From Basidiobolus meristosporus CBS 931.73 (Eukaryota > Fungi > Basidiobolomycota), in NCBI GenBank assembly GCA_002104905.1, contig MCFE01000487.1, positions 1-64,000 of the forward strand: 64,000 bases of DNA, written 5' to 3'. Below the pieces are notes generated by a model. It was not told where the DNA came from. It saw only the letters and a program-made list of their open reading frames with translations, and searched no databases. Positions 40,691 to 64,000 of this stretch are shown here, one piece after another; within the stretch, counting starts at the first letter, position 1, and each line of letters starts with the position of its first letter. A program made the translations under genes and the position numbers.

Positions 40691-40995
40691 AAGATGATCA
40701 TTTGAAGGAGAGGCCGACCGGATGTATTTATAGGATAATGAGAGTAGACGCATGTAGTAGCACACTTTATCAGTGTTGCCGATTTGTATTGGTGAATTAA
40801 GCTGCACAGCACTAACATCCATGTATGATCCCATTTTATGGAGTTGATTTATGCCAGCATTTGCGTTCAACATGTGCTCGGATTCGATTGATATGTTACC
40901 TATGGTTACCGCTATTTCCATATTTAATGGCTCAATCACGTAGAATCATTCAAAGGGGATAGTGTTCTGCCCTGAGCTGGTCTTTGCAGAGTGAA

Positions 40996-41068
40996 GGGGC
41001 GTTGGCCTAATGGATAAGGCATCAGACTTCGGATCTGGGGATTGTGGGTTCGAGTCCCATGCGCCTCG
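40996..41068 (+). tRNA. tRNA-Arg (anticodon TCG), copy 1
   Basis: 73-nt cloverleaf GGGGCGT-TG-GCCT-AATGGATA-AGGC-A-TCAGA-CTTCGGA-TCTGG-GGATT-GTGGG-TTCGAGT-CCCAT-GCGCCTC-G, followed by a T-run. Confidence 0.95.
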
Positions 41069-41401
41069 TATTTTGTGCTTCATCGTTAGATGTCTCGAAC
41101 TAGAGCCATAATAGCATTTAGCTCTGCAAATGCAGTTGTATTATATATGAAACTAGCAGTAATCATCATCAGTGTCCTTGAAATGCTCGTATCTCATGTC
41201 CTTTCATTTACTTCGTATTAGCGTGACTATTAAAAACAAGTGAATTACCTAGTGAACAAGAAAAAATATAGCAGAGCACCTGCATTTGTAGGAAATATAA
41301 TATATTCTCTGTTTAGGAAGTAATAATTCTTTGTGAAAGTACTGTTTATTAAGTTGTATAACGAGGTTAAGTCTTTGGTATCTAGAGGGTATCTTAAGTC
41401 T

Positions 41402-41782
41402 CTAATAGTCGTCGTAGTCATCACCATGGCCACGGCCACCACTATACTTCCTTCTTCCATGGCCATTGCCATCGCCATCATAGTCATCATCGTAATCATT
41501 GCCATACTTCTTTCTTTTTCCGTGACCGTGGCCATCGTAGTCATCTCCATCATATCTCCTTCTTCCACGGCCATTACCATCGTAATCATCGTCGTAGTTG
41601 CCACCTCCACCGCCGCCATATCTCCTTCCGTGACCATTGCCGTCATAATCATCGTCATAGTCACCGCCACCACCATGACCTACCCCCTTGTAGTCAGGAT
41701 CGTAAGAGCGCTCAAGGATTGAAGCATTGATAGCCAACGCAGCGGAGATGACAAGGAGAAGCTTTGCAATGGAGTATTTCAT
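41402..41782 (-). CDS. Secreted Gly/Asp/Tyr-rich repeat protein (126 aa), candidate Kex2-processed precursor
   Basis: Signal MKYSIAKLLLVISAALAINA; YDDDYDGNG(H/R)G units separated by RR/RRR/KRKK/RRK; TATAAATA at 41820-41827 (minus) supports the ATG at 41782. Confidence 0.85.
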   Translation of the reverse strand: MKYSIAKLLLVISAALAINASILERSYDPDYKGVGHGGGGDYDDDYDGNGHGRRYGGGGGGNYDDDYDGNGRGRRRYDGDDYDGHGHGKRKKYGNDYDDDYDGDGNGHGRRKYSGGRGHGDDYDDY

Positions 41783-42082
41783 CTTGAGATGGTGATTTGA
41801 AGGAGTGAACGACTGGATGTATTTATAGGATAATGAGAGTAGACGCATGCAGTAGCACACTTTATGAGTGTTGTTGATTTGTATCGGTGGACTGCATAGC
41901 GCTAACAGTGATGTGTGATCTCATCTTATGAAGGAGTTGATTTATGCCAAAACTTGCGCTCAACATGTGCTCGGATTTGATTGATATGTCAACTATGGTT
42001 ACCGCTATTTCCATGTTTAATGGCTCAATCACGTAGAATCATTCAAAGGAGATAGTGTTCTGCCCTGAGCTGGACTTTGGAG

Positions 42083-42309
42083 TGTTATGAAATCCAGGCC
42101 AGTTCCTGTCCTTCTGTTTGGTGTAACAAGGTCTGTCCTTTATTTTAGCGTAGGATCTACTTTTTTATACATTTCTCGATCATTTGCATACAACTTGTCT
42201 TACTTTAGCCCATCAGTCTTTGATCATCTTTGATGATTTTTGGTGTTGACGCATCTCTATATGCGACAACTTGCTGCCTGTTCTGGTCGGGATTCAGACT
42301 TTCATAACA
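42083..42309. mobile_element. 227-bp solo LTR immediately upstream of tRNA-Arg copy 2
   Basis: TGTTATGAAA...TTTCATAACA (10-bp perfect terminal inverted repeat); 4-bp TSD GGAG; absent from the duplicated locus at ~40985. Confidence 0.9.
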
Positions 42310-42319
42310 GGAGAGTGAA

Positions 42320-42392
42320 GGGGCGTTGGCCTAATGGATAAGGCATCAGACTTCGGATCTGGGGATTGTGGGTTCGAGTCCCATGCGCCTCG
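42320..42392 (+). tRNA. tRNA-Arg (anticodon TCG), copy 2
   Basis: Identical to 40996-41068; followed by a TTTTT Pol III terminator. Confidence 0.95.
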
Positions 42393-42626
42393 TTTTTGTA
42401 ATTTCAACACCATAATCGAAATAGAGTCAATAACACTGTTTGAATTATTCGCCAAGGTCACCATTTCGAAGTAAATCAAATTATTTGGATATTTCAATTT
42501 CCAACTTGAAAGTTTTAGCGTTACATTTTGATACCCTTATAAATAGCCACAATTCTGAACATGTCATGTGTAAATGTTGGTTTATTGTGTATTTGGTATT
42601 TTGTACCAAGAAGGTATCTCAAGTCT

Positions 42627-42995
42627 CTAATAATCGTCGTAATCATCACCTCGGCCGCCACCACCATACTTCTTTCTTCCATGGCCATTACCATCATAAT
42701 CGTCGTCGTAATCATTGTCATACTTTTTTCTTCTTCCGTGACCATGACCATCGTAGTCATCCCCGTCATATCTCCTTCTTCTTCCACGGCCATTACCATC
42801 ATAATCATCATCGTAGTCGTTACCATACTTCTTTCTTCCTCCATGGCCATTACCGTCATAATCATCGTCATAGTCACCGCCACCACCGTGACCTACCCCC
42901 TTATAGTCAGGATCGTAAGAGCGCTCAAGGACTGAAGCATTGATAGCTAGCGCAGCGGAGATGACAAGGAAAAGCTTTGCAACGGAGTATTTCAT
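42627..42995 (-). CDS. Secreted Gly/Asp/Tyr-rich repeat protein (122 aa), paralog of 41402-41782
   Basis: MKYSVAKLFLVISAALAINASVLERSYDPDY...; same repeat units with RKK/RRRR/RRKK/RKK spacers. Confidence 0.85.
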   Translation of the reverse strand: MKYSVAKLFLVISAALAINASVLERSYDPDYKGVGHGGGGDYDDDYDGNGHGGRKKYGNDYDDDYDGNGRGRRRRYDGDDYDGHGHGRRKKYDNDYDDDYDGNGHGRKKYGGGGRGDDYDDY

Positions 42996-43982
42996 GTTGA
43001 TATAATGGTTGGAAATAATCAGAAGATCAAGGCATTTATACATTTTACAATGCAAGAATATGCAGAAGCACGCCCATCAGTGTTTGCTGATCACACGTAC
43101 AGTGTTGAGGAGAGATGTCCGTAGCATTCATGGCTTTAATCTAGTGCGCATTTAGCAGTTTTATAATGCGATATGTGTTGTTAGTTAAGCACACTCAGTA
43201 CCAAACTACCTGTGCTGACAACTCAGCCTGTAAGCTGTACATCAATTAGATGCTTCCCAACTTGTGCTATACTTGCAGTCATGGCTCTTTCTGCAGGTGA
43301 CTTGAGTTTGATATGTCCAGATGCATCTTATGTTTTGAAATCAGATTTTCTTGAGTGCCAATGGCATGCCTGTGGTAATGTAGGTTTTCTGGCCAACGAG
43401 AAGCAGTAGTCAATCATATAGTATTGTGGCATATTTCTAAATGGAATTCTGAGTCAGTTTACTTCAGGCCATTACACTGTGCAATATTCCTAGTAATGGC
43501 CAGACATTTCTTTGTAGCATATTAACCAGCAATAGTAGTAGCAGTAGTAATTAAAATCATCGTTGGTGAAGCGTTTCAGCAGATTGAAATAATAGGAAGC
43601 AAAGTATAACGTGCTTTATGTTTGCTTGCATAGACTCACGGTGAAATGCCACTCTCAATTTGCGAGATAAATATATTCAAGAACCTGAATACGGGGTAAC
43701 CCAAGGAGGAGGATTTTAGTGGCGAAATTTGTCAGGTATTTAGTTCGGATATATTCGGATATATTGTATTAGGTAACCACTCCAAATAGATAATCCACAA
43801 TTTCCTTTTATGACCCACTGTTCTTCGCGGAGGTTACTAATGGGGGAATGTTTTATTGATATGACGAACGTTCTCTAGTTGGAATGACAAGAAATATTTT
43901 ATATGTTCTAGATGTATGGCAAGCATTTCTATTTAAATAGGCCTGTTAGCATTTTCTATCACTGGAAACGAATCTAAGCAAA

Positions 43983-45914
43983 ATGAGACATGTAATTATT
44001 GGAGGTGTAGCCGGAGGAGCAACAGCAGCCGCCCGATTGAGAAGAGTGGATGAGACGGCTGAGATCATTTTATTGGAGAAGGGTCCCTATATCTCTTACG
44101 CCAACTGTGGTTTGCCGTACTATATCGGCGGAGTCATTGCCAAACGCGAAAAACTGCTGCTGCAGACGCCAAAGTCGTTTGGTACGCGTTTCCGTATTGA
44201 CGTCAGAATAGAGAGCGAAGTAATTGCCATTCATCCAGAGGATAAAAGCCTGACCATTCGTAGGGCAAATGGAGAAGAATACAAAGAAACTTACGACAAG
44301 CTGCTACTATCACCAGGTGCCAATCCCGTGAAGCCGCCATTGGAGGGTATCAATTCGGAAGGCATCTTCACCCTGCGCAACGTAGAAGATACCGACCATA
44401 TCAAAGCGTACATTGCTGAGAAACAGGTAAAGCGTGCCGTAGTAGTAGGTGCCGGCTTTATCGGGCTGGAGATGGCGGAGAACCTGCACCATGCCGGGGT
44501 GGCTGTTTCCGTAGTCGAAATGGGCAACCAGGTTATGGCTCCTATCGACTTCTCTATGGCAGCGTATATCCATCAACACTTGACACAAAAGGGCACATCT
44601 TTATATCTTGAAGAAGGTGTTACCCACTTCCAGCGTACAGACAGCGGCATCACTGTTTTCCTGAAAAGTGGCAGGACCATTCCTGCCGATATGGTGTTAC
44701 TCTCTATCGGCGTGCGTCCAGCAACAGCATTGGCGCAACAGGCCGGCTTGAAGTTGGGAGAGACGGGTGGCATCTGGGTAGATAAACACTTGGAAACCTC
44801 CCAAAAGGATATCTATGCAGTGGGTGATGCTATTGAATATCCTCATCCGTTGACCGGGAAACCGTGGCTCAACTATCTTGCCAATCCGGCTAATCGCCAA
44901 GGTCGTATCGTAGCCGATAACATGGTATTTGGCAACACGGTTTCTTATGAAGGGGCTATCGGCACTTCTATCGCCAAAGTATTCGATATGACTGTGGCTT
45001 CTACAGGACTGGCAGCCAAGCGTTTGAAGCAGTTGGGAATGGAGTATCAGAGTTCAGTTACCCACTCCTCTTCCCATGCAGGCTATTATCCGGACGCTTT
45101 GCCCTTGACGCTGAAGCTAACCTTTCACCCTAAGACTGGTAAGCTTTACGGTGCGCAATGTGTGGGCTACGAAGGAGTGGACAAGCGTATCGACCAAATA
45201 GCTGGAGTCATCAAGCATGGCGGGACGGTATATGACCTGACGGAAACTGAGCACACCTATGCACCCCCTTTCTCATCTGCCAAAGATCCTATAGCCATTG
45301 GTGGATATGTTGCCTCCAATATAATCAGCGGGGCTATGCCGGCTATTTCCTGGCGCGAACTCGTTGATGAGAAAGACCAAGTGATGATGTTTGATACCCG
45401 TACTGCCGAAGAACATTCATTTGGCTCCATTCCGGGGGCTGTCAATGTCCCCTTGAATGAATTGCGTGAGCACATTGCTGAAATCCCGATGGATAAACCA
45501 GTTGTTCTATTCTGTGCCATAGGACTGCGCGGCTATCTAGCTCAGCGCATCTTGATGGGACGCGGTTATCGCAATGTTCGCAACCTAATCGGCGGCTATA
45601 AAACTTATTCCACCAGCGTAGCTCCTATTGCAAAGCCTTCTACCGATGTTCCTTCACCACAAGAGGCTGGTGAGGCGACAAAGATAAACGTATGCGGGTT
45701 ACAGTGTCCCGGGCCTATCATGCAGGTAACAAAAGCGATGAACAGCATTGCGGTTGGCAAACGTGTTACAGTCACGGCAACTGATGCAGGTTTGGTTCGT
45801 GACGCCTCTGCCTGGTGCGACACTACAGGCAACAAATTGATATCAAAGCATGAAGAAAAAGGTCGCTACACAGTTGTTCTAGAAAAAGGTGAACCCGCCA
45901 CTAAACAGAATTGA
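43983..45914 (+). CDS. Bacterial-type CoA-disulfide reductase fused to rhodanese and TusA/SirA domains, 643 aa
   Basis: GGVAGG (FAD), SYANCGLPY (single redox Cys), GAGFIGLE (NAD(P)H), YAPPFS, rhodanese FCAIGLRGY, TusA-like CGLQCPGP; intronless. Confidence 0.93.
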   Translation: MRHVIIGGVAGGATAAARLRRVDETAEIILLEKGPYISYANCGLPYYIGGVIAKREKLLLQTPKSFGTRFRIDVRIESEVIAIHPEDKSLTIRRANGEEYKETYDKLLLSPGANPVKPPLEGINSEGIFTLRNVEDTDHIKAYIAEKQVKRAVVVGAGFIGLEMAENLHHAGVAVSVVEMGNQVMAPIDFSMAAYIHQHLTQKGTSLYLEEGVTHFQRTDSGITVFLKSGRTIPADMVLLSIGVRPATALAQQAGLKLGETGGIWVDKHLETSQKDIYAVGDAIEYPHPLTGKPWLNYLANPANRQGRIVADNMVFGNTVSYEGAIGTSIAKVFDMTVASTGLAAKRLKQLGMEYQSSVTHSSSHAGYYPDALPLTLKLTFHPKTGKLYGAQCVGYEGVDKRIDQIAGVIKHGGTVYDLTETEHTYAPPFSSAKDPIAIGGYVASNIISGAMPAISWRELVDEKDQVMMFDTRTAEEHSFGSIPGAVNVPLNELREHIAEIPMDKPVVLFCAIGLRGYLAQRILMGRGYRNVRNLIGGYKTYSTSVAPIAKPSTDVPSPQEAGEATKINVCGLQCPGPIMQVTKAMNSIAVGKRVTVTATDAGLVRDASAWCDTTGNKLISKHEEKGRYTVVLEKGEPATKQN

Positions 45915-46329
45915 AGCATTTTGCGTGGCTACAAAAATGCTCCACCTTCCTATAACGTTAGTTTAGTTAGTTTCCCAATTTGGGATTATATAAAGTCATT
46001 TGCAATCATGCCATTCCATTCCATAAATGTATGAGGCTCTTGTGCTCACTAAATCCAGATCAATTATGCTCCCGATATTCTCAAAATAGTACATAATTGA
46101 CCAATTCGTCCCTTGCTTCAAGATCTTGATATGGATTGAAAATGAAAATGAATGCTAGCCAAAGAAGGCAATTGAAGGCTATACTTCACCTAATGTAATT
46201 CTCAAATGTTACAAATACTTTCCTCGTACACAAATAGAACAGCTAATAGTACTAATTGGTTGGATATTTGTCAGCCACTAGAAAATATCATATGATAAAC
46301 TGGCTCTTTTTGTTATGAAAGTCTTGCAG

Positions 46330-49300
46330 ATTGTAAGGTACGTGAAGTAAATGTAGGTTTTTTGATTTTCACATCATTAATATTGCATGTAAAGGGGGTC
46401 TGGAAACTTTAGTAAGCTCTGGCAAGACAACATGTAAAAATGTTTATGAAGATCCCACAAATACATGTTGTAAGAGTTTTTGCATTATTGGAAGTGATGG
46501 GAAGTACATCTATATCATGTGGTTCTTGCTAAATGACTGATTGAATGTAAAAGTTGTATCTGTTGTAAGAGTCTTGGAGATATTGGAAGTGATTGGGAAG
46601 AAAAGTAGATTATGTGGTTTTCACTTAATGATATATTGAATGCATAAGTAGTATATATACTTTACATGGTCTTGGGATAGCAAACACATAGAATAGATTT
46701 TACATGGTCTTGGCATTACAAACACGTAGAATAGGTTAAGAAAGGTCCCAAGAACATGTGTGCAAAGTTAGGGGCTGTTTGGACAACTTATTCAATTTTC
46801 ATATTCTGGAACCTGATATGTGGGTGAAAATAATCCAAGTAGATCCCAACCAGAAATTTGGTCATTATTCTCTGAGATTTGTAGGTAATGATCAAAGTGA
46901 CTAAGTTAGGTGGATATTTAGTTGGAATTCCAAATTTCTACAACACTCCCTCTCTACTAAATGCTCATATTGACTAGTCCTAATTTTGACCTAAGATATT
47001 CAAGTTTGTCTCTAGCTTATGGTTTGGTAAATAGGTTGGCAATCATTTCATCTGTAGGACAGTAAACCAAGTTAGCTAAGTTAATCTCTATAGCTTCACA
47101 TATGAAATGATGTCTAATATCTGTGTGCTTAGCTCTAGCATGAAAAGTTGGATTTCTAGCTAATTGTATACTTCCTTGATTATCTTGAAATAAAGTAATA
47201 GGCATTTTTTGACATAAGCCTAAATCTTTAAAAAGCTTTCTTAACCACATTGCTTCTTTTGTAGCTTCACATGCTGCCATGTACTCTGCCACTGTGGTAG
47301 CAAGTGCTATGGTTATTTGCTTTCTTGAATTCCTTGAAATTGCACCTTTACTATAAAGAAAGGTGTATACTCAGGTGGATCTTGTGACTTCTAAATTTTG
47401 TCCCCAATCAGCATCAGAGTATCCCACTCAATGTTATGCCAAATCCTTATAGGTGTACCTTAAGCAGATATCAGCAGTTCCTTTTAGGTATATAAAAATC
47501 TGCTTAACTGCTGCAATATGATCAGATCTGTAGTTCTGATTATGCTGGCTGACAACTCCCACTGAATATAAAATATCTGGACATGTTCCAAGCATGATAT
47601 ACATTAGACTGCTGACCATAGATTGATAGGGAAAGTCAGGGCTTTCAGATGGCACCAGGTGCTCTTGATTTGGCTGAATTTTGATCAAGTTAAGGTTTGT
47701 CTCCATTAGGGTAGCTGCTGGTTTACAGTCTTCCATTTGGTACTGCTTTAGTATATATGGAATATGCTTGGATTGGCTTGGGGTAATAGTCTGTAAGCTT
47801 CTGTCTATGGAGAACTTGATCCCTAATCAGTAAAGGAGTTCTCCCAGATTGGACATCTTGAACTCCTCAGATAGGCTGGATTTAGTCTCTTCTAATGTTT
47901 CTAGGTTATTGGTGGCAATAGTAAAGTCATCCATGTATAGAGCTAGTAGAGCCAGATTTGCTCTATCTGGCTTATAGAAGAGAGCATAGTCAGCAGTACT
48001 CCTTTGCAAACTCAAAGATTCCAAATAAGAATATATCTTGCAAATCCCAGCTCTTGATAATTGTTTGAGACCATGTAGTAACTTTTTAAGCCCAAAGAAC
48101 AAATGGGGGTAATCCTGGCCAGCAAAGCCATCAGGCTGGTCTATACACATGTTATTATCATATTTTCCATTCAAAAATGCAGTTTCTTCATCCATTTGAA
48201 GTATAAAAACAAATATTTGGCAGTAATAGTTAATACACATCTGATGGAATTAAACTTGGCTACTGGTGCAGAGGTCTCATTATAGTCATACCCATTTGTT
48301 TGAGAGTATCCTTTGGCCACAAGTCCTGCATTTTATCTTTCAATCTTACTATTAGACTTGTATTTTGTCCTGAAGACCCAACTGCATACAATCAAATTTT
48401 GATTGATTGGTAATTTGACAAAGTCTCAAGTTTGATGTTCCATCAGTGCCGGATAATCCTTGGTCATTGCAGATCTCCAAAACCTTGTCTAAGGGCTATT
48501 TAAGGCCTCATTTACAGTCTGGGGTGCATCAATATGGACTGAATAGGCATAGGCTGAGTGTGTACCCTCATTGATATAGTAATTTGGGCCATTTCTGGTC
48601 CAGTTGAATCTCCTAGTTTGCAATACTGGAATGATCACACCAAGGATACTCATAGGTGCTGATACAGGCTGAACCACAGTTGCAGAGTCCTCTGGAGAAA
48701 AAAAATCTTCATTCTCTTGCTCTGATTCAATCCTGACTGTTGGTGTACTTGAAATCAGATTTTTGTCATCATTTGATGTCAATTTTTGGGAATATCTTGA
48801 TTTTTCATCAAAGAACACATCTCTGGCATTGATCAGCTTCTTTGCTTTGGCAGTGTAGGGTCTGTATGCTTTACTCTCATTGCAGTAGCCTAAAAATATG
48901 CCTTTTACACACTTTGGCTCAAATTTTGACTGATTACCAGGCAGTTCCTTGGCAAATACTTAGCACCTAAACATTATTAGATGTTCTGCACTTTATCAGT
49001 AAGCGTACCATGCCTCAAGTGGAGTAGAATCATGTAGTATTCTGTTATTACTCCAACTTTCAAGAAATACAGCTGTGGCAACTAATCTAACTTAATACTA
49101 AAAGATAATTTTGATGATGGACCATATATCTTGCCATATCCATTTTCTTGCTGATTTGCACCTTCTGCTATCCCATTTTGCTATGGGGAGTATAGTACAG
49201 TAGTCTCTTGCTTTATCCCATGAATCTTGCAGAAGTGAATGAAGAGCTTTGAGGAATGTTTTCCACCATTGTCAGAACATATTTTCTTGATTTTTTCACC

Positions 49301-49780
49301 AGTTTCTCTCTCCACCAAGGCTGTAAGCTCCTTGAGCTTAGAGAGAGCTTCTTTCTTTCTCTCCATGAAGTAGACCCATGTGTAACTTTTATAATCATCA
49401 ATAAAAGTGGTTTAACAACACATTCTGCCTAAAGACAAGTTTTGCATTGGTCTGCACCAATCTGAGTGAATTAGATCTAATTTCTTTGTAGTTTTGATTC
49501 ACCCAGAGCTCCTGAACAGTTGTATGGCTTTTTCCTCATTTATGCAGGCATCAGAGTGCTTCAAATCAGCTCACAGAGCAATTTTTACCCTGGGAACTAG
49601 CTGATCTCTGATCAATTTGTGCAAATATTCAAAATTGATTTGTCCAAATTGCCCGTGCCAAAACATTGATGCTTCCTCATTTAAGTAACTTATAATTGAT
49701 TCCTGAAAGGATAGAATATAGTCAACTTTTATAGATTCTGATCTTTGATACTCAAAACAATATGGGCATTAATTTGATCT
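46330..49780 (-). mobile_element. Degenerate copia (integrase-RT-RNase H) with 3' LTR 46561-46945 and older LTR scraps at 46330-46560
   Basis: Minus ORFs 47017-47292, 47434-47736, 47827-48240, 48489-48818, 49181-49366 match the family pol; the LTR carries an internal ~38-bp duplication. Confidence 0.9.
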
Positions 49781-49819
49781 GTTAGTGTTGGGGGGGGGGA
49801 GGAAAGTCACCAAGTGGTG

Positions 49820-51620
49820 GAGTCTTTATTTATTTATGACAAGTATCAAAGAAGCCAAGTTAATCTGAGGTAAGTTGTACTGGTTTGTGGTTTCTGAACT
49901 GTAGCCAGAATGGCCAGTTGAGTGGGGGAACTGAGGGGAACTTCTAAGCAATCACCAGTCAAATTTACTAGGCAAATCTGTCCAATTAGGGTAAGGGGGG
50001 AAACAGTCTCCAACAGGTAAAATCTTTATTTCAGCTGAAACAAAGAAGACAGCACTACTGTTATAGCTATAATGCAAGAGTGTCTTGCTGAGTGGAACTT
50101 GTAGGTAAGTTAACAAGGAGAGATGATAGTTCTCAGTGCTCAAGACACTGTTTAGTGGGAAGGGGGGTAGCAAGAGGGGCAAGAATGATTTGTGAACAAT
50201 ATTGATAAGGGTTAAGGGGGATGATAATCACTAAATAGTGAAATCTTAGGGTTAGGGGCCCTATGAAAAATAATTTGGGTTAGGGGAGACAGTCAACAAC
50301 AGGTGAAATCTTTATTTCAGTCAAAACAAAGAAGCCAGCACTACTGTTGTAGCTTTGATACAAGAGTGTGTAGCTGAGGGGAATTTGTAGGTAAGTTTAC
50401 AAGAAGTGATGATAGTTGTTCAGTGCTCAAGACACTGTTTAGTGGGAAGGGGGGTAGCAAGAGGGGTAAGAGTGATTTGTGAACAATATTAATGAGGGGA
50501 ATATGATAAGGATTGATATTCATTATAAAGGGAGTATGCTGCTTCCAATAATGCTGTCAAAGGTCTGTCAAGTACTTTAGGTAGGCCAGTTTGGGTTTTT
50601 CTCACTGTAGAATATAATGAGCAAGCCTCTTGTCATCAGGATCTCCAAGTATTGTTTTCCAGCAGGAGCCAGGTGTAGTGTGGTGTATCCTCTTCCAGGC
50701 CTTCATGAGTGGGCTGTTCCAGTGGTGAATTCTGAGATATAATCAGGCACTAAGGTAGAGAAGTCTGATCTTATAGGGCATAAAACCTGAAACACCAAGA
50801 ATAGCATGTCTGTAGGGGCATTCAGGCAGATGAGGCACCAAGGAGGTAATACACCAGACTGCAAACTTGTCAAGTTTAGTGCAGTTGCTAGAAGTAAGAG
50901 AGAGAAGTGGTAGGCCAAATTTCAGAACAGGAAAGACAAACTGCTTGAGAAGGAGGCAATGGGAGCTGAATTGTAGGAGGAGTAACAGCCAGTAGATTGT
51001 GGAGTGTCTGTCATGCCAGGATAATTCTCTTCTTCAGGTGTGCTCCAGAGTCTAGTTCAGTAGAGAGGAATGGAAAGCCAAGATATGTAGCAGAAACCTG
51101 AGCAGGTAGAGTGCAGTTCTCTAAGTTGATAGGACAACCCAAAGGTACTGTCTTTGCAATGGAAAGCTGGAGATTATTCTTCTGCAGATACTGGTGGATG
51201 GTCTGGGAATCTTGTTGCATATTGGAGGAGGATATTCTAATGTCATCAGCAAAGAAAGTAACCAGGCAGTCAGCTGAGAGTCTTGGGAAATCATTCAGGA
51301 AGATGGCAAACAGTATAGGACTAGGCACTGAGCCTTGAACCACTCCATTAGGAACTGTGAACACAGCTGATTGCTCACTTAGGTGCAGAATTCTTGCTTG
51401 TGGATCCAGAAACAGAGACCTGACAAGGAGGGTGAGAGAGGTACTGGAGAAGCATTGTATCTTGGACCAAAGCAGGTTTCTGTCAGCTGAATTAAAGGCC
51501 TTAGTAATATCAAACAGAACAGAGGGATACTTGCACTGGAGAGAGTGATCTTGGCTAAGTACAACTGCATATTCCAAGGAGAGGCTAGGAACAAAGCCAA
51601 ACTGTGCGGGGTGAAACTTA
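49820..51620 (-). mobile_element. Non-LTR (LINE) retrotransposon 3' half: RT domains plus 3' region and (TAAA)n tail
   Basis: HPAQFGF...FDITKAFNS...GVVQGSVPSPILF...FFADD...YLG (ORF 51011-51577); TAAATAAATAAA on the minus strand near 49825. Confidence 0.88.
49985..50510. repeat. Diverged tandem duplication (~290-bp period) in the LINE 3' region
   Basis: Two copies of ...AAATCTTTATTTCAG...CAGTGCTCAAGACACTGTTTAGTGGGAAGGGGGGTAGCAAGAGGGG... Confidence 0.85.
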
Positions 51621-51743
51621 CATCACTCAATAGTCATGTCTGCAGTCAAAAGAACTCACAAAAATTCCCTTGGTGGTGACCAGGCTACTTGTGGCAACGT
51701 CTCCGGTAACCCAACAAAAGTAGCAGCCTCCAACAACATCAAG

Positions 51744-52043
51744 ATGAGCCATGTGGACCGGGCGCACCTTCATACAGATCCGGTGTATTGCTACAACTAT
51801 GTGGCTAAGTTTGTGGATTTCTCCAACAAAGATGTCCAGGCCATCAAATCGGTGTCGGAGAGACTGGCCCCTCTTGGTGGTGTCATAGTGGACACCGTGT
51901 ATGACAAGCTCAGAGCATTCGACATCACTTGGGAATCCATGGCCAAACGCCACGGGGGGTACGCTGGCGAGGTGGTTGAGAAAGTGCAGGATCTCAAGGT
52001 CGACAGCTCCCAGATCAAGTACAGAAAAGATATGCTGACCCAA
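51744..52043 (+). pseudogene. Protoglobin-type globin, apparently 3'-truncated
   Basis: MSHVDRAHLHTD...FVDFSNKDVQAI...IVDTVYDKLRAFDIT...QIKYRKDML resembles the N-terminal two-thirds of fungal protoglobin-domain proteins; no downstream exon with the proximal-His region found. Confidence 0.6.
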
Positions 52044-52959
52044 GTGGGAAGACATCGCATATTCATTTTTGAACGTAAATTGGCGTTGGAAATTGAAAAT
52101 GGGTAGATTTTATGGTTCTCTGGTTTCCACGAATTTAGGGTAGTGTCTAGTAAGGAAGAAAAGACCAATACCCGAGGTATGGTAAGAGGTATGGCCAACA
52201 TATTGAAGAAAAAAACTAGAATGCACGCAACAAGCGAAACAATCCGAATAGGTCATGCTCTTTGGATTACATTTAAGAGGTGTCGCTGCAAAGTTGACAA
52301 TGAGGATTTATAAATACGCTAGTGAGTGTCACGCGGGCGTGGCACACTCACACAAGTGCAGGTATTCTTACAAGCGCAAATCATCTTGACCTTCTGGCAC
52401 TCACATTACTTCGGCAGTAACCACCACAACAGCAGATTTTGGCAGCTTTTGTGATTTCAAGATACCTGTCAATAATAAAGTATGCAGATAGCAAGAGCGA
52501 TTGCCCTATTTGAAACCTTGTTTCAAAGTGCCATGACGCCAAAGCCTAGTCATGTTAACTTTGAATTTTGTACTGATTATGCGAAGTTGTAAATTTGAAT
52601 ATTGTTCTCAGATCAGCAATTGACTCAATCCGGGTTGCAATCCGGATGAGCCTGGGTGGTTATAATCACGATTAAGTAATGAACCCCATTTACATCACAA
52701 AGAAAACTATATGTTATTTAAAAATAACAGGTAAAAGTTTCCTACTGAGAATTGATGTTTCCCCAGCTAGGCTGAGCCTAATTAAATCCACCGACTCTAT
52801 CGTCAGTATTGTGGGATGTTATGATGGGGTGAATTGTGAATTCTTCTACGAATCAGCTTACTGGCCATGTGAATGAGAGTTGGTCCACTCATCAGAATAT
52901 TTATGGTATGGTTGGATCATCTATTTGTTTTGGTCTGAAGTTTTTTTGTTTCGCCAGTA

Positions 52960-53270
52960 TGTTACGATTTAAATCCTACCTAGTCACTACCGATCACTTG
53001 AACACTACTGATCGAACACCTTTAATTACACACTGACGATCAATCACACTCAGTGATACACACATTATTCAATACATCTTGGACCCTTCTTTTGGAAGCT
53101 TGCTCTACGTTATCGGAAGCTCTCCTCCCGAGACTATCTCTATACAAACCCCTCTAAACACTATCAATAAAGCATCAACCTTTCACCAGCTCATCAATCA
53201 TTCAGATAACCCTCTCCGATTCTTATTGACTATCCCCCGATCCTTCTGCACTTACCCTTGATTCATAACC
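52960..53270 (+). mobile_element. 311-bp probable solo LTR immediately upstream of tRNA-Thr
   Basis: TGTTACGA...TTCATAACC, internal AATAAA, 4-bp flanks AGTA/AATA (3 of 4 match). Confidence 0.7.
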
Positions 53271-53280
53271 AATAAAATTG

Positions 53281-53352
53281 GCCTGCGTAGCGCAGTGGTT
53301 GCGCGTCAGTCTCGTAAACTGAAGGTCGCCAGTTCAATCCTGGCAGTAGGCA
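53281..53352 (+). tRNA. tRNA-Thr (anticodon CGT)
   Basis: GCCTGCG-TA-GCGC-AGTGGTT-GCGC-G-TCAGT-CTCGTAA-ACTGA-AGGTC-GCCAG-TTCAATC-CTGGC-AGTAGGC-A; one acceptor-stem mismatch (G7.A66). Confidence 0.88.
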
Positions 53353-56300
53353 TATCCTTTTATTCCACTCCATCTAGGTTGAATGATACGGCATTATTTC
53401 GCTTATAAGGGAGTAACAGTGATGGATACTGGAGTCATTTACCTGAAACAATTGGTCAGTGATGGACTTTCCAAAATAGATAATCCAAGAATGAGCACTC
53501 TGTTCTGGAATTTCACCCCTTTGATAGCTTGATCACTTGATGAGCTATCACGTATAATGGTGGATTTTGGGTGAAATACTGCTGCTGGGAAATATTTGTT
53601 TCCGCAGATCCAGTGACAGCCTTCATAATTTGACTAGCTTGATCATGTTGTTGGTCAGGTATGTACAGTAAATGCCGTTCTAATCTACTGCTGCCGCATA
53701 AAGCTTTCTGGAGTCATTGATTGGACAGCAACAAAGTCTTATTTGTATTTTTAAGGCATTGCTGTTCCACTGGTAAATGGAAGTCCCGACTAAACAACAC
53801 TCTCTTGGAGATCCGATAAGAGTTGACCCATATCATGAGGGAGAAGACACTTTATTCGTGTGCGAGTCTATCCCGCTAGTGCTAGTTCTGAAGTCATGAA
53901 TAATGTACGCTCGAGCAAGTGTTGGTGATAAATTAGCCATAGATTGGTTTCTGAGTAATGGTCAAATATCTCGACAATTGTTTATGATGTTGTTTGATTC
54001 TCTTCTCCTAAACCCTTCATCCTGTAGCCCTATTTAAATCGGAATATTTGTTAGAGATAAACACGGATCAAAGCCGAGAAGTGAAACATGCACGGATCAT
54101 ATGAAGACTGATCTGAAACAACACTACATGAGCATCTAGGTAAGGGTCCAGTACCACACAAATATAGCACTACCACAGCTCGAGGAGCATAGCAGAGTCG
54201 CAACACTTTAGGATAATATGATATGTCTATCCAACATGTCAAAAGTATACATGAATGAAGAAGTGACCTGGAAGAAACAAGCCCCTTTGGATATTTGACG
54301 GATCAGAATACGCCATATTTCGGTTATGTACTTGAAGAATCATAGAATATTTCCCAAGCTGCTAATCCGTTTGCTCCTTGATCCACTGCGCAAGCTAATT
54401 CTGTCGGCGTTCTAGTATTGGAGGGGCATGTGAGAGCTGTTTGCTACGGGAGCTGAAGTCAATTTACTATGTTAGGGGGATGTTGACACTACAAAGATCC
54501 GTATTGTTATCAGCACAGTCAATCCAACAGGTTGCCTTTTCTTGTGTACGTTTCACTGATGAATACTCCTAAAGTGATGGCTTTGGAATAGGATGTAGTG
54601 GGCCCATGATAATAGCAACAGCTAGTGGTAACCGGTCTTTAATGCCGATAAATCATGCGGGCGCTTGCTTTTTGAATCCTGGTAGATTTGTTAGACACAG
54701 GAACCCAAAGTCATAACCACCTATCCAGCCTTGCCTAGTGCAAAGGTTACACATATACCATTTGAAGTTGCTCTTCTGGTCATCAGGATACGTTGTGGGC
54801 TCCGTGGAGATATGGTCTTTATCGTCAGCTTCATATCCAACTGCTCCTTCTTTTCTCATATTGGATTTAATACCGTCAAGCAATGAAACGAATGAGTAAT
54901 GGACAAGGGTATGGCTGGCCTACTTGATCACTTTTATATGGAACTGTTTAGTGCGCACACCCACAGAAGGTAATCACTTTCAAACCGGCTCATTCCAGTC
55001 CAAAAGGTCATTCTATTGTAGGTTTCAAACGATAGAGTGTACTAGTTTCTCCACATTGCAAGTCGATCACATATAACATGAAGCCAACAAAATTCATATG
55101 CAGAATAATCATGATATTAAATACGGAGCACCACCTTGCCACAACACCTCTTCCAACAACCGCTTCTCACACACTAGTACAAATCGGGGTTAAGGCTATT
55201 CAGTAGTAGCTACAACTAAGGGTTTATGGAGTGCTTGCTGTGCTAGACATATCCAATTCATTGACATTACTAGTAATGAGTAAAGAATTGAATAAATCTT
55301 CAAACATACTCTTGTAAAGTGATCACTTTGCAACATGGTTCTGTCACCCTATATGGGTGTATACACTAGGTTGGGTCATGATTGTGCTATAAGAGTGCCC
55401 AAGTCACTAAGTCTGAATAGAGTGTTGACCTGAGTTGTATCGTAACACATGCACAAACATCATTGGAACTGACTTTGTTCTGTTGTGGCTCAGTATAGTA
55501 GCTGCCTCGGGCTGAACTGTTTACTTCATTCAAGATGCTATTGTACGGCGCATCCATAACAAAGCATTAGAAGCTACACAGGAAGATGACGAGTCTAACT
55601 TATAAGCATTTTGTACTGACGGTAAACAAGCACTTGTTAGATTTCCCATGTGTCACCACGAGTTTTCTTCCTAGTTCAATTCACTCCTACTCTTTGCCAG
55701 CTACTAATAGTGATGGGACTTTTCAGAGCATGACGTGGGATGTTGGGCGGTACAAAGTGAGAATGAAACTAGCTCAATACATAATACAGCGCCCGCCAAT
55801 GCGTAGGCGTTTGTAGGTGGATAAGGTACTCACTAAAGCAAGAGATTTCTTTCCCAGAATTTCAACTTGCAGGAGTAACGTCTGTTAATGGGTATACAAG
55901 ATGAGCTGTTGCTTGTTGTAGAGTGTGGTACGTTGATAAAAAAAGATGCTGTCATTGGAATGCCTGCTTTCCTTGAATCAAGCTTTTCTAGGTAGCAGCA
56001 ATCAATTTCATTGATTTTGCCGAAGTTGCAAATGAGCTAATGAACATAGATGTCGATGATGTTTTGCTGAGTAGCGCATTTCAAATCAGTTCATTGAGGT
56101 ATACTACAGTATATATACATACATATATATAATAGGCATAGCAGACTTATTCTACATGACACAATCGTTATTTGATTGAAGCTGGTTGAAAGTAATAACA
56201 AGTCTGTACTATGGATTCCACGTTCAGCTTCCATACTGGTATTGACATTCGGTCAAATAGAGTTATTGCATAAGATTAGCAAGGTTGGGATTTATTTCCA

Positions 56301-56353: not shown

Positions 56354-57748
56354 TTAATACTTGTAGAAGTCGCCACTCCCATGCCCTTCATATTCTCCAC
56401 CACCTCCACCGTTGCCGCCATATCCACCGCCGCTGCCGCCACCGTTTCCACCATATCCTCCGCTGCCACCACCGCCATTTCCACCATATCCTCCACCACT
56501 ACCGCTGCCGCCACCGTTTCCACCGTATCCTCCGCTGCCACCACCGCCATTTCCACCATGTCCTCCGCTGCCACCACCGCCATTTCCATCATATCCTCCA
56601 CCGCTGCCGCCACCGTTTCCATCGTATCCTCCGCTACCACCACCACCGTTGCCACCATATCCTCCGCTACCGCCACCGCCACTCCCACCATATCCTCCGC
56701 CGCTGCCGCCACCGTTTCCACCGTTTCCTCCGCTGCTACCACCGCCATTTCCACCATGTCCTCCGCTACCACCACCACCGTTGCCACCATATCCTCCACC
56801 GCCGCCGCCACCGTTTCCACCATATCCTCCACTACCGCCACCGCCGCTCCCACCATATCCTCCGCTGCTGCCGCCACCGTTTCCACCGTATCCTCCGCTG
56901 CTACCACCGCCATTTCCACCGTGTCCTCCGCTACCGCTACCGCCACCGCTACCGCCACCGCTACCGCCACCGCCGCTCCCACCATATCCTCCGCCGCTGC
57001 CGCCACCGCTTCCACCGTATCCTCCGCTGCTACCACCGCCATTTCCACCATGTCCTCCGCTACCACCACCACCGTTGCCACCATATCCTCCACTGCCGCC
57101 GCCACCGTTTCCACCATATTCTCCGCCGCTGCCGCCACCGTTTCCACCATATCCTCCGCTATCACCACCACCGTTTCCACCATATCCTCCGCTGCCACCA
57201 CCGCCATTTCCACCATATCCTCCACCGCTGCCGCCACCGTTTCCACCGTATCCTCCGCTACCGCCACCACCGTTGCCACCATATCCTCCGCCGCTGCCGC
57301 CACCGTTTCCACCGTATCCTCCGCTGCCACCACCGCCATTTCCACCATATCCTGCACCGCTGCCGCCACCGTTTCCACCGTATTCTCCGCTACCACCACC
57401 ACCGTTTCCACCATAACCTCCGCTACTGCCACCGCCGTTTCCACCATGTCCTCCGCCGCTGCCGCCACCGTTTCCACCGTATTCTCCGCTACCACCACCA
57501 CCGTTTCCACCATAACCTCCGCTACTGCCACCGCCGTTTCCACCATGTCCTCCGCCGCTGCCGCCACCGTTTCCACCATATCCTCCACCGCTACCGCCAC
57601 CACCGTTTCCTTCATAGCTATCACCGTGAGCTACACCACCACCTTCACCAGCGTAATCTTTGGTGTTGTATCCGCGCTCGAGAACAGCAGCACTCGCCAT
57701 GGACAAGACTGAAGCTGCAAGAAGGAGTTTGATCGAAGAGATTTTCAT
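56354..57748 (-). CDS. Secreted glycine-rich repeat protein (464 aa; GGYGGNGGG(G)S repeats)
   Basis: Signal MKISSIKLLLAASVLSMASA, pro-segment AVLERGY, dozens of 9-10 aa repeats; CTATAAAT about 40 nt upstream on the minus strand. Confidence 0.88.
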   Translation of the reverse strand: MKISSIKLLLAASVLSMASAAVLERGYNTKDYAGEGGGVAHGDSYEGNGGGGSGGGYGGNGGGSGGGHGGNGGGSSGGYGGNGGGGSGEYGGNGGGSGGGHGGNGGGSSGGYGGNGGGGSGEYGGNGGGSGAGYGGNGGGGSGGYGGNGGGSGGGYGGNGGGGSGGYGGNGGGSGGGYGGNGGGGSGGYGGNGGGDSGGYGGNGGGSGGEYGGNGGGGSGGYGGNGGGGSGGHGGNGGGSSGGYGGSGGGSGGGYGGSGGGGSGGGSGGGSGSGGHGGNGGGSSGGYGGNGGGSSGGYGGSGGGGSGGYGGNGGGGGGGYGGNGGGGSGGHGGNGGGSSGGNGGNGGGSGGGYGGSGGGGSGGYGGNGGGGSGGYDGNGGGSGGGYDGNGGGGSGGHGGNGGGGSGGYGGNGGGSGSGGGYGGNGGGGSGGYGGNGGGSGGGYGGNGGGGGEYEGHGSGDFYKY

Positions 57749-61787: not shown

Positions 61788-62490
61788 TGGTCAAAGCTGT
61801 ACTACTTAGTAGACTGGATTGGTTATGGTCCAAGTGACCAAACATGGGAACCAGCTACCCATCTCACTAATTGTGAAGAACTAGTTGCCCAGTTCCACCA
61901 GCAATATCCTGCAAAACCTGCCCCAAAGGGAAACAGAGCTTTGCCTGGAAGCAGAGAATAGTGTCATGATCACATGACAACCATGAGCACCCATGTCAAG
62001 TTTCAGCTTCCTAGCTCAATTTCTAAGAGATTCCTTCTGGAACCTTCTACCACCTTCCAGAAAGTTCCTGTCCATTCCAAACCATTGTTACACAATGGAA
62101 CATTCCATGGAAGCTTCCCATTGTATTTTTCATAGTTCAATACCATATATGGAGATACCAGGTCACATGACTTAGTCATATGATCAGGTGACCCAACCCA
62201 TTTCCCCATCTGGTTTCAGTGCTGTGTCATCTATGTCATTATTCCCAGCACCATTACTGTGCCTCACCCCACAATCCCATTTGTATTAGCTAATATCTCT
62301 TGGCATCAGTATAGCCAAAAAGTATATAAAGTCCTATCCCCCCTTAAGTATTCCTCAGTCTGATCAACACAGGTCTTGAATAAACAGCCTTGCCTTGGAA
62401 ATCCACCTTGCCTTGTTGATCCACACCTAAGTCCTTTCCTGGTCCTGCATTACCTAGCCCTACTCTCCTGCCTTGTGTCTATTCATAACA
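61788..62490 (+). mobile_element. 3' end of a chromovirus (Ty3/gypsy): chromodomain, PPT and LTR 61962-62490
   Basis: Manual translation SKLYYLVDWIGYGPSDQTWEPATHLTNCEELVAQFHQQYPAKP (integrase chromodomain), purine tract, TGTCATGA...TTCATAACA. Confidence 0.9.
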
Positions 62491-62955
62491 GTGCAACTTT
62501 AAGGAATCAGAGTACAACACCTGAGAAATCAGAAGCTCAAGTACCTTTCTGCAGGTGGGCAGCAGAGATATTGACCTGTAGGAGCTAGGATCCAGGTGCT
62601 CTCCTTTACCCTTGCACAGTGGCAGAACATTGGTAAAGGACCATTCTTCAGGAGTTAAAAGCTGGGCTGAGCATCACTGAAACAGTGGAAGAATAAGAGT
62701 GGACATGGCCTTGGTACTAGTCTTCTGAAGCTCATAGGAGGTAGTGTCCACACCTGGGGCAGAAGAGGTAGGAAGCCTCTTGAGCTCATTATAGATTCTC
62801 TCTTGATCAAGTACAAGTGGGATTGGCAGAGTCCTGAAGTCAGGATGAATGCCAGGAGTTGAGTACTGCTTTGCAGAGAAGAAGATGTTAGCCAGCTGTT
62901 CTGTTGAAGGTAACTTCCTGAAAGAGGGCCTCATTGCCCTGTAGAGTCCTGACAC
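62491..62955 (-). mobile_element. LINE RT N-terminal fragment
   Basis: SAPGVDTTSYEL...PEEWSFTNVLPLCKGKG...PSSYRSISLLPTCRKVLE...DSLKLH (non-LTR RT domains 0-2). Confidence 0.85.
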
Positions 62956-63580
62956 TGTTCATGTTATATAGTTGGATGATTACCAAGGCAAAGTGCTCAT
63001 AATATGGTTAGGGTGTGTAGGTCCTATAGTAAGGGCTAGGAAAAGGCTAGAAGAGCAGGGGGTTTGGGGGATGCAATACCCCATACTGCTCCCTTACTCT
63101 TTGAATTCCCTATGGATCACTTTTCTCTCATTCTTGGTTTTGGTTCCTTGGGTTACAATTCCTCCACCTAACTCTTATCACCCTAACCATAAATATTTTT
63201 ACCCTACAATTGGCACATTGTCTGGTCATATAGTGGGCATGTCTGGGCCAATATTGGTCTTGCTACACTTTCTGTAAGCTCTGTATAAGTCTTGGTGTAT
63301 ATATGATTAATAAACTCTTTCTTTTAATGCTATATCTAATAATTAATAGGAGTCATCCCAATCTGGTCACAATCCCATATTTCAATAAGCTTCTGGCACC
63401 ATAAATTGCACAGCCCTAATATAATAAGAAAACTCATGATTGATGCAAATTTTCTGTAACCCAATTGCTTTAACCACATATAAAGTGCATCCCAAAGTTC
63501 AAAATATATTATAGCTATAATAGGAACTTGATTTGACACCATTGAAACAACAACTTGGGTTCCATGTGCACATGTATCCT

Positions 63581-63845
63581 GCAGGAGTCATCAATCATTA
63601 ACCGTGTGGTAATAAAGTGCTTTTATTTTTCATCATGCTAATTTTACATGAGCCCTGACGCACTTTTATAGTGCATGGTGACCATACCCTAACAGGTTTT
63701 AAGGATACCTACTTGCTACATTTGCTTGGGTCTAGCAGGAGTCATCAATCTTCAGCCACATGGTAATAGAGTGCTTTTATTTATCATCATGCTAGTTTTG
63801 CATGAATCCCTAATGCACTTTTATAGTGCACAGTAGCCATAACCT
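63581..63845. repeat. Diverged direct repeat, ~154-bp period
   Basis: GCAGGAGTCATCAATC...TGGTAATA(A/G)AGTGCTTTTATT...CATCATGCTA...GCACTTTTATAGTGCA at 63581 and 63735. Confidence 0.8.
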
Positions 63846-64000
63846 GTTGTATCCAAGAGAAAAGTGTAATAAACCCATGAATGAGTTACCTGAATCTAAG
63901 TGACAACTAAGTGCAGAATCTTAGGATTGTCAAGGGTGACAGAAATATTAGCAGAGAAGTTCTGGTCTAATATTGGTTTTGTATATAGCTGAGTTGGGCT

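What the first reader, a model, noticed from the sequence alone, without database searches (positions are those of the whole stretch)
42083..53352. Two unrelated solo LTRs both end 10 nt upstream of a tRNA gene: candidate tRNA/Pol III-targeted retrotransposons
Seen: a 227-bp TG..CA element with a GGAG TSD ends at 42309 and tRNA-Arg starts at 42320. A different 311-bp LTR-like element (TGTTACGA..TTCATAACC, flanks AGTA/AATA) ends at 53270 and tRNA-Thr starts at 53281. Both gaps are 10 nt, both elements have 4-bp flank duplications and TCATAAC termini, and their interiors are unrelated. The duplicated tRNA-Arg locus at 40996 lacks the insertion and shows the empty site. Established: yeast Ty3 integrates at the Pol III transcription start via TFIIIB, and Dictyostelium DGLT-A also targets tRNA upstream regions. 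Inference: this fungus has one or more position-specific Ty3/gypsy families with a 4-bp TSD. I do not know of this being described for such a lineage.
Basis: partly seen in the sequence, partly recalled or inferred. Interest (0 to 1): 0.85.

Follow-up and report, generated by a model that had tools for sequence, protein, structure and literature searches.

The report
Retrotransposon LTRs aimed at tRNA gene starts
In the early-diverging fungus Basidiobolus meristosporus, leftover ends (solo LTRs) of two unrelated retrotransposon families sit exactly 10 bases in front of tRNA genes, the mark of elements that home in on the tRNA transcription start as yeast Ty3 does. I found no report of this habit outside ascomycete yeasts and slime moulds.

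Summary

- **Element A (42083-42309)** is a clean 227-bp TG..CA insertion with a 4-bp GGAG duplication. It ends 10 nt before tRNA-Arg(TCG), and a matching empty site lies at 40986-40989.
- **A second, independent A insertion** (99% identical LTR) lies in a paralogous tRNA-Arg array of the same genome. It has the same position and orientation but a different duplication (GAAG), different flanks and its own empty site.
- **Element B (52960-53270)** is not unique DNA. Contig depth in a DNA run of this organism jumps about 15- to 150-fold exactly at 52960.
- **A duplicated copy of the B locus** keeps a perfect AATA/AATA duplication and the canonical ...TTCATAACA end. It also lies 10 nt before tRNA-Thr.
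- **A and B** share termini and a 4-bp duplication, but their interiors are unrelated. The resident copia family and a third LTR family make 5-bp duplications and are not at tRNAs.

The best reading is solo LTRs of retrotransposons that integrate at the Pol III start site, as Ty3 and Tj1 do. The Ty3/gypsy assignment could not be tested here because no full-length parent was reachable.

This scan has already reported the same habit many times on other DNA of this genome, including intact gypsy elements. In the literature I could search, it is not described for early-diverging fungi. I class it as a new member of a known kind.

The parts
40986..40989 (+). Empty target site (GCAG) at -10..-7 of the uninterrupted tRNA-Arg paralogue
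   Evidence: Alignment of the two tandem units; sequence
40996..41068 (+). tRNA-Arg(TCG), with no insertion upstream
   Evidence: ARAGORN; Rfam 57 bits
42079..42082 (+). Left copy of the 4-bp target-site duplication GGAG of element A
42083..42309 (+). Solo LTR, family A. It is 227 bp and reads TGTTATGAAA...TTTCATAACA. Copies 99% identical lie at L004:5647-5872 and L006:5646-5871.
42310..42313 (+). Right copy of the duplication GGAG, at -10..-7 of the tRNA
42320..42392 (+). tRNA-Arg(TCG). It is intact and identical to the 40996 copy.
52956..52959 (+). Left copy of the target duplication of element B. It reads AGTA here and AATA in the paralogue L007.
52960..53270 (+). Solo LTR, family B. It is 311 bp and reads TGTTACGA...TTCATAACC; the paralogue L007:19465-19775 ends ...TTCATAACA. 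The family is highly repeated in this genome.
53271..53274 (+). Right copy of the target duplication AATA, at -10..-7 of the tRNA
53281..53352 (+). tRNA-Thr(CGT), intact here. The L007 paralogue carries an 11-nt deletion.

Best explanation
Elements A and B are solo LTRs. They are what recombination between the two LTRs leaves behind, and they come from two different LTR-retrotransposon families of Basidiobolus meristosporus. The integrases of these families are directed to the RNA polymerase III start zone of tRNA genes.

Shown:
- Integration makes a 4-bp staggered cut at -10 to -7 relative to the mature tRNA 5' end, so the LTR ends at -11.
- The tRNA gene stays intact.
- The same position is hit again and again, whatever the local sequence and whichever the tRNA.

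Inferred:
- The integrase is tethered to the Pol III pre-initiation complex (TFIIIB or Pol III), as in yeast Ty3.
- The parents are Ty3/gypsy elements.
- The termini shared by A and B (TGTTAYGA...TTCATAACA) reflect related integrases.
For: Family A:
- It has an exact empty/filled pair in tandem paralogues, TG..CA ends, a 10-bp terminal inverted repeat and a perfect 4-bp duplication.
- A second A copy, 99% identical, lies 10 nt before another tRNA-Arg in L004 and L006. Its duplication is GAAG/GAAG, and its empty counterpart is L005:5891.
- Flanks of the two filled units are only 59% (upstream) and 55% (downstream) alike. Each is 92-98% like empty units upstream and 85-95% downstream. So the two insertions are independent events at the same nucleotide position and in the same orientation.

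Family B:
- It is a highly repeated family with a sharp 5' boundary at 52960 and loose ends into other flanks.
- The paralogue L007:19465-19775 shows a perfect AATA/AATA duplication and the canonical CA end, 10 nt before tRNA-Thr.

Across families:
- The A target (GRAGAGTGAR) and the B target (AATAAAATTG) share no sequence, yet the distance is the same. This argues for recognition of position, not of sequence.
- The 4-bp duplication sets A and B apart from the resident copia family (5 bp, GAAAC) and from LTR family C (5 bp, ATGGG). Neither of those sits at a tRNA.

Known systems:
Against: - No full-length element with these LTRs, no primer-binding site or polypurine tract, and no gag-pol was found in the window or in about 155 kb of further loci. 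The LTR nature and the superfamily therefore rest on end structure only.
- B is a single insertion event, shared by the window and L007 through segmental duplication, and no empty site was found for it.
- The last ~50 nt of B are at single-copy depth.
- Both A events lie in paralogous tRNA-Arg upstream regions with similar sequence. For A alone, sequence-specific targeting is therefore not excluded.
- No RNA data or Pol III start mapping exist, and no protein interaction was tested.
Confidence: 0.8

Rival explanations
1. The link between LTR and tRNA is an artefact of segmental duplication. One chance insertion next to a tRNA was copied along with the tRNA, so nothing is targeted.
For: This genome region is heavily duplicated. 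L004 and L006 carry the same A insertion with 100% identical flanks. The window and L007 carry the same B insertion with 98% identical flanks.
Against: - The window's A insertion and the L004/L006 insertion have different duplications (GGAG against GAAG, concordant on both sides).
- Their flanks are only 55-59% alike, and each has a separate empty counterpart.
- A third event, from an unrelated family, sits at the same distance from a different tRNA.
Confidence: 0.04
2. The elements recognise a short DNA sequence, or insertions land at random and survive only at harmless sites. The Pol III machinery plays no part.
For: Both A events use near-identical target sequences (G[G/A]AG AGTGA[A/G]) in paralogous tRNA-Arg leaders. 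No biochemical evidence exists.
Against: - B's target AATAAAATTG is unrelated in sequence but lies at the same -10..-7 position.
- Selection alone cannot place three events at one nucleotide position.
- Eight other sampled tRNA-Arg units (L006 left out as a duplicate of L004), five of them with the same GGAGAGTGAA leader, are empty. That is what an occasionally hit target looks like, not what selection produces.
Confidence: 0.08
3. A and B are not LTRs. They are small non-autonomous elements (MITE-like DNA transposons or TRIM/SINE-like units) that happen to have TG..CA ends.
For: - Only isolated 227-311-bp units were seen, and A has a 10-bp perfect terminal inverted repeat.
- No internal region, primer-binding site or polypurine tract was seen.
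Against: - TG..CA ends with TGTTA..TAACA termini and 4-bp duplications are typical of LTRs.
- They resemble the termini of the resident copia LTR (TGTTGTAA..TTACAACA).
- A 6,261-nt contig of run X1 starts with a B-like unit (82% identity), as a full-length element would.
- Unchecked notes of this scan report intact Ty3/gypsy elements at the same position elsewhere in this genome.
- From my own knowledge, known DNA transposons that target small-RNA genes (Dada) insert inside the genes and make 6-7-bp duplications.
Confidence: 0.08

Closest known systems
Ty3 (sigma LTR) of Saccharomyces cerevisiae, Ty3/gypsy (Metaviridae)
   Same: - It inserts position-specifically at the Pol III start of tRNA genes and leaves the gene intact.
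- It leaves solo LTRs at a fixed distance upstream of tRNAs.
- It has TG..CA ends.
Source: PMC5911963.
   Different: - Ty3 makes a 5-bp duplication (my own knowledge); here the duplication is 4 bp.
- The host is a budding yeast, not an early-diverging fungus.
- No sequence relationship could be tested, because no pol is available here.
Tj1 of Schizosaccharomyces japonicus, Ty3/gypsy
   Same: [quoted passage not shown]
- Its LTR is short (244 bp), against 227 and 311 bp here.
[quoted passage not shown]
Source: PMC4600332.
   Different: - Tj1 has a 5-bp duplication, against 4 bp here.
- Tj1's targeting was shown by de novo integration. Here it is inferred from genomic copies only.
DGLT-A and the other tRNA-gene-targeting retrotransposons of dictyostelid amoebae
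   Same: They use the same 'safe haven' strategy upstream of tRNA genes. It is thought to have arisen by convergence (PMC5006619, PMC6101501).
   Different: DGLT-A inserts 13-33 bp upstream, a looser window. The host lineage is Amoebozoa.
Ylt1, Tyl3 and Tyl6 of Yarrowia lipolytica, and beta/Tca8 of Candida albicans
   Same: They are Ty3/gypsy elements found a few bp upstream of the tRNA start (Table 1 of PMC5911963). From memory, and unchecked, Ylt1 also makes a 4-bp duplication.
   Different: All are in Ascomycota yeasts.

Membership tests
LTR retrotransposon (solo LTR) | TG...CA termini with short terminal inverted repeats | tested here: met
   A reads TGTTATGAAA...TTTCATAACA. B reads TGTTACGA...TTCATAACA in L007, and the last base has mutated to C in the window.
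LTR retrotransposon (solo LTR) | Target-site duplication of fixed short length, with an empty site that holds one copy | tested here: met
   The duplications are GGAG/GGAG (empty paralogue GCAG), GAAG/GAAG (empty site L005:5891 GAAG) and AATA/AATA (L007).
LTR retrotransposon (solo LTR) | Dispersed repeated family | tested here: met
   A has two independent insertions among 10 sampled tRNA-Arg units. For B, contig depth rises about 15- to 150-fold exactly at the 5' boundary, with loose ends into other flanks.
LTR retrotransposon (solo LTR) | Full-length copies: two LTRs flanking gag-pol, with a primer-binding site and a polypurine tract | tested here: inconclusive
   None was found in the window or in loci L002-L010. 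The only hint is a 6,261-nt X1 contig that begins with a B-like unit, and that contig could not be fetched.
Ty3/gypsy (Metaviridae) | Pol domain order PR-RT-RNase H-IN, and an RT/IN phylogeny within Metaviridae | not testable with these tools
   No coding part of the parent elements was reachable. A protein search with an LTR ORF found nothing. The only LTR-element proteins in the window are copia type (RVT_2).
Pol III start-site-targeting retrotransposons (Ty3/Tj1 type) | Insertions pile up within a few bp of one position just upstream of tRNA genes, whatever the tRNA and the local sequence | tested here: met
   Three events from two families hit tRNA-Arg twice and tRNA-Thr once. In all three the LTR ends 10 nt before tRNA +1. 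The sample is small.
Pol III start-site-targeting retrotransposons (Ty3/Tj1 type) | Dependence on the Pol III transcription complex (integrase-TFIIIB contact, active promoter) | not testable with these tools
   This needs integration assays or interaction tests. No parent integrase sequence is available.

The most novel reading that the evidence does not exclude
Several LTR families in Basidiobolus have unrelated interiors but share integrase-recognition termini and an unusual 4-bp duplication. They may form a lineage of Pol III start-site-targeting elements separate from the Ty3 and Tj1 lineages. If so, either this targeting is far older in fungi than thought (predating the split between Dikarya and the zygomycete-grade fungi), or it has been invented yet again with a different tethering solution.
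Probability: 0.3. Interest if true: 0.65.

Novelty: new member of a known kind. Interest (0 to 1): 0.5.

Why it matters
Integration aimed at tRNA genes is the textbook example of a transposon finding a safe landing place. It is known in mechanistic detail only from budding yeast, with parallels in a few ascomycete yeasts and in dictyostelid amoebae, all of which have compact genomes.

Basidiobolus is an early-diverging fungus, from my own knowledge with a large genome, and this region is repeat-rich and much duplicated. The same nucleotide-precise habit there extends the taxonomic range. It also questions the idea that the habit is an adaptation to compact genomes. With several families and natural empty/filled site pairs, it would let one ask whether the tethering to TFIIIB/Pol III is ancestral or convergent.

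In practice, these LTRs also mark tRNA gene starts, and they explain part of the structural variation among the tandem tRNA arrays of this genome.

Tried and rejected
Searches that came up empty:
- blastn of A and B against the window found no second copy.
- The scan's findings searched by sequence gave blanks.
- I searched the 60-aa ORF inside LTR B as a handle to other copies and found no homologue.
- I searched the window's copia RT to sample TE-rich contigs of this genome. The best hit was 74% identical and on a 1.9-kb contig, so this was useless for sampling.
- The Zn-cluster factor gave only Basidiobolus ranarum orthologues. Their loci (L002, L003) hold no tRNA and no copy of A or B.
- Protoglobin paralogue loci L007-L009 hold no intact tRNA.

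No empty site for B:
- L004 lacks 52426-54446 and L010 lacks 52635-53778. These are larger deletions with no TE ends and at most 1-3 nt of microhomology. They are not empty sites.

Considered and rejected:
- B is not the LTR of the neighbouring RVT_1 fragment at 51011-51577. That fragment is a 5'-truncated LINE-like element, with an FADD motif and repeats related to 50260-50300.
- I looked for an older LTR stacked just upstream of B. The sequence before B (…gtttcgcc) does not end like an LTR.

Not done:
- I did not determine the sense orientation (U3-R-U5) of A or B. TATA-like and AATAAA motifs in B on the + strand are only suggestive.
Full report
**Source of the window.** The window is contig MCFE01000487.1 of assembly GCA_002104905.1. 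Cluster-mates at 90% identity or more of two window proteins are named Basidiobolus meristosporus CBS 931.73. The closest foreign homologues of the Zn-cluster factor are from Basidiobolus ranarum, at 67-68% identity. The host is therefore an early-diverging fungus of the phylum Basidiobolomycota.

**The observation.** ARAGORN and Rfam both place tRNA-Arg(TCG) at 40996-41068 and 42320-42392, and tRNA-Thr(CGT) at 53281-53352, all on the + strand.

Element A (42083-42309, 227 bp) begins TGTTATGAAA and ends TTTCATAACA, a perfect 10-bp inverted repeat. It is flanked by GGAG on both sides, and 10 nt (GGAGAGTGAA) separate it from the tRNA. Aligning the two tandem tRNA-Arg units shows a clean 231-nt insertion, the element plus one copy of the 4-nt target. 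The empty paralogue reads cttt-GCAG-agtgaa at that site, and the flanks are about 90% identical.

Element B (52960-53270, 311 bp) begins TGTTACGA and ends TTCATAACC. Its flanks are AGTA and AATA, with 10 nt to tRNA-Thr. Neither element recurs in the window. Their interiors are unrelated to each other and to a third LTR family, with local alignment scores at the level of shuffled sequence.

I laid Logan contigs of two DNA runs that hold this locus (X1 and X2) on 52700-53450 at 80% likeness.
- Summed contig depth is about 560 in the flank 52830-52959.
- It jumps to 38,000-87,000 exactly at 52960 and stays between 9,000 and 55,000 to about 53219.
- Loose ends just before 52959 and 52966 lead into other flanks, so other copies sit elsewhere.
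- The last 50 nt or so (53220-53271) are at single-copy depth, so this copy's 3' end has diverged or is poorly assembled in other copies. One X2 contig covers 53146-53269.
- A 6,261-nt X1 contig carries a B-like unit (82% identity) at its positions 37-252, as a full-length element would. I could not fetch that contig.
- Runs X6 and X7, filed under the same species label but with flanks only about 82% alike, show no family B.

**More of the genome.** The gene for a CoA-disulfide-reductase-like protein with rhodanese and TusA domains, and the protoglobin gene, both have paralogues at 90% identity or more in the same genome. Their contigs gave loci L004-L010.

L004, L005 and L006 each carry four tRNA-Arg(TCG) genes in arrays like the window's. 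Family A recurs at L004:5647-5872 and L006:5646-5871, 99% identical to the window's copy. It again ends 10 nt before a tRNA-Arg and has the same orientation. There the duplication is GAAG/GAAG, and the corresponding unit in L005 (tRNA at 5891) is empty and reads cttt-GAAG-agtgag.

A matrix of flank identities settles independence.
- The window's filled unit has an upstream flank 92-96% like one class of empty units, and a downstream flank 95% like the last, empty unit of L004 and L005.
- The L004/L006 filled unit is 98% (upstream) and 85% (downstream) like the empty L005:5891 unit.
- The two filled units are only 59% and 55% like each other.
- L004 and L006 are identical and count once.

So family A has inserted at least twice, independently, into the same four nucleotides (-10 to -7) in front of two different tRNA-Arg genes. 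Both insertions came from nearly identical source copies.

**The B locus in paralogues.** L007 holds a segmental duplicate of the B/tRNA-Thr locus, with flanks 98% and the LTR 97.1% identical. In that copy the LTR ends with the canonical ...TTCATAACA and the duplication is a perfect AATA/AATA. The window's AGTA and terminal C are therefore later point changes. The tRNA-Thr of L007 has lost 11 nt.

This is the same insertion event as the window's, not an independent one. No empty site for B was found. L004 and L010 lack the whole neighbourhood through larger deletions (52426-54446 and 52635-53778) with no transposon ends.

**What sets A and B apart.** The abundant copia family of this window has termini TGTTGTAA...TTACAACA and makes 5-bp duplications, for example GAAAC around 8180-8529. 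A third LTR family, C (28462-28982, TGTTATGAAT...GATCATGACA), has a second copy at 61962-62490 on the other strand. It sits inside a copia LTR with a 5-bp duplication ATGGG and is not near a tRNA. Only A and B combine the ...TTCATAACA end, a 4-bp duplication and the -10 position.

**Mechanism.**

Shown:
- A 4-bp staggered integration at -10..-7 relative to the mature tRNA end.
- Repeated use of that position by two families at two tRNA species with unrelated leader sequences (GRAGAGTGAR and AATAAAATTG).
- Intact tRNA genes downstream.

Inferred:
- Ty3 integrates at that start through contact of its integrase with TFIIIB.
- Tj1 of S. japonicus lands 5-11 bp upstream of the mature end (PMC4600332).

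The most likely mechanism is therefore tethering of the pre-integration complex to the Pol III initiation complex. The Ty3/gypsy nature of the parents is not shown here. The only LTR-element proteins in the window are copia type, and the searches that might have reached a parent failed.

**Rivals.**
- Co-duplication of a chance insertion is excluded for A.
- Sequence-specific targeting could explain the two A events alone, but not B at the same distance.
- A non-LTR identity (MITE or TRIM type) cannot be formally excluded without a full-length copy. The end structure fits it poorly.

**Known or new.** The 2018 review of Pol III-targeted retrotransposons lists LTR examples only from Saccharomyces, S. 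japonicus, C. albicans, Y. lipolytica and Dictyostelium. The dictyostelid survey covers amoebae only. Full-text searches that combined Basidiobolus or early-diverging fungi with tRNA-adjacent retrotransposons found nothing relevant.

This scan, however, has already reported the same habit on many other pieces of this genome. Those reports include stacked solo LTRs before tRNA-Leu and tRNA-Gly, and intact Ty3/gypsy elements 10 bp before tRNAs. They are unchecked by me and I used them only as leads; one of them first named the organism, which I then verified.

What this window adds:
- Two further LTR families.
- The 4-bp duplication as a family mark.
- A natural experiment: two independent hits on paralogous tRNA-Arg genes, each with its own empty site.

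**Verdict.** This is a new member of a known kind, of moderate interest.

Noticed in passing
window 43983-45914 (+): An intact 643-aa protein combines a pyridine-nucleotide-disulfide oxidoreductase (CoA-disulfide-reductase-like) with rhodanese and TusA domains, a bacterial-looking architecture. It has three paralogues at 90% identity or more on other contigs of this genome and one in B. ranarum.
   Followed up: partly
window 40780-43100; L004:4600-8400; L005:4800-8400: Tandem arrays of units of about 1.0-1.4 kb. Each unit holds a tRNA-Arg(TCG) and a small gene on the other strand for a repeat-rich protein with no Pfam match (for example 41402-41860). There are two units in the window and four in each paralogous locus, with at least three flank types.
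   Followed up: partly
window 28462-28982 (+) and 61962-62490 (-): A third LTR-like family, C, is 521 bp and reads TGTTATGAAT...GATCATMACA-type ends (…GATCATGACA here); the two copies are 92-95% alike. The first copy sits inside a copia LTR with a 5-bp duplication ATGGG. The second has no recognisable duplication. Neither is near a tRNA.
   Followed up: partly
window 46311-46465 (+): A fragment starts TGTTATGAAAGTC, 14 nt identical to the reverse complement of A's 3' end. It is cut off by a copia insertion at 46466. It may be the end of a related LTR that is not at a tRNA.
   Followed up: no
window 49780-51630 (-) and 62600-64000 (-): These are 5'-truncated LINE-like fragments. One holds an RVT_1 stretch with an FADD motif at 51011-51577. 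The 3' part contains a tandemly duplicated G-rich unit of about 290 nt (49980-50500). A loose end suggests that the same LINE tail has inserted into another copy of LTR B.
   Followed up: no
L007:19786-19850: The duplicated tRNA-Thr(CGT) behind the L007 copy of LTR B has an 11-nt deletion in the D-arm region, and ARAGORN no longer detects it.
   Followed up: partly
window 52426-54446 against L004; 52635-53778 against L010: Two paralogous loci have lost the B/tRNA-Thr neighbourhood through different deletions, with no transposon ends and at most 1-3 nt of microhomology. Two further segments (54553-55090 and 55835-56006) are present only in the window when compared with L004.
   Followed up: partly
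window 56370-57650: A long array of 33-bp tandem repeats (32 or more copies, GC skew -0.41) has open frames on both strands. The paralogue on L010 is annotated as a gene (6394-7231, minus strand).
   Followed up: no
window 52700-52777: Contig depth is raised here (up to about 9,800 against about 560 in neighbouring flank) in runs X1 and X2, which points to a short unidentified repeat about 200 nt upstream of LTR B. A TGTTATGA motif lies nearby at 52817.
   Followed up: no
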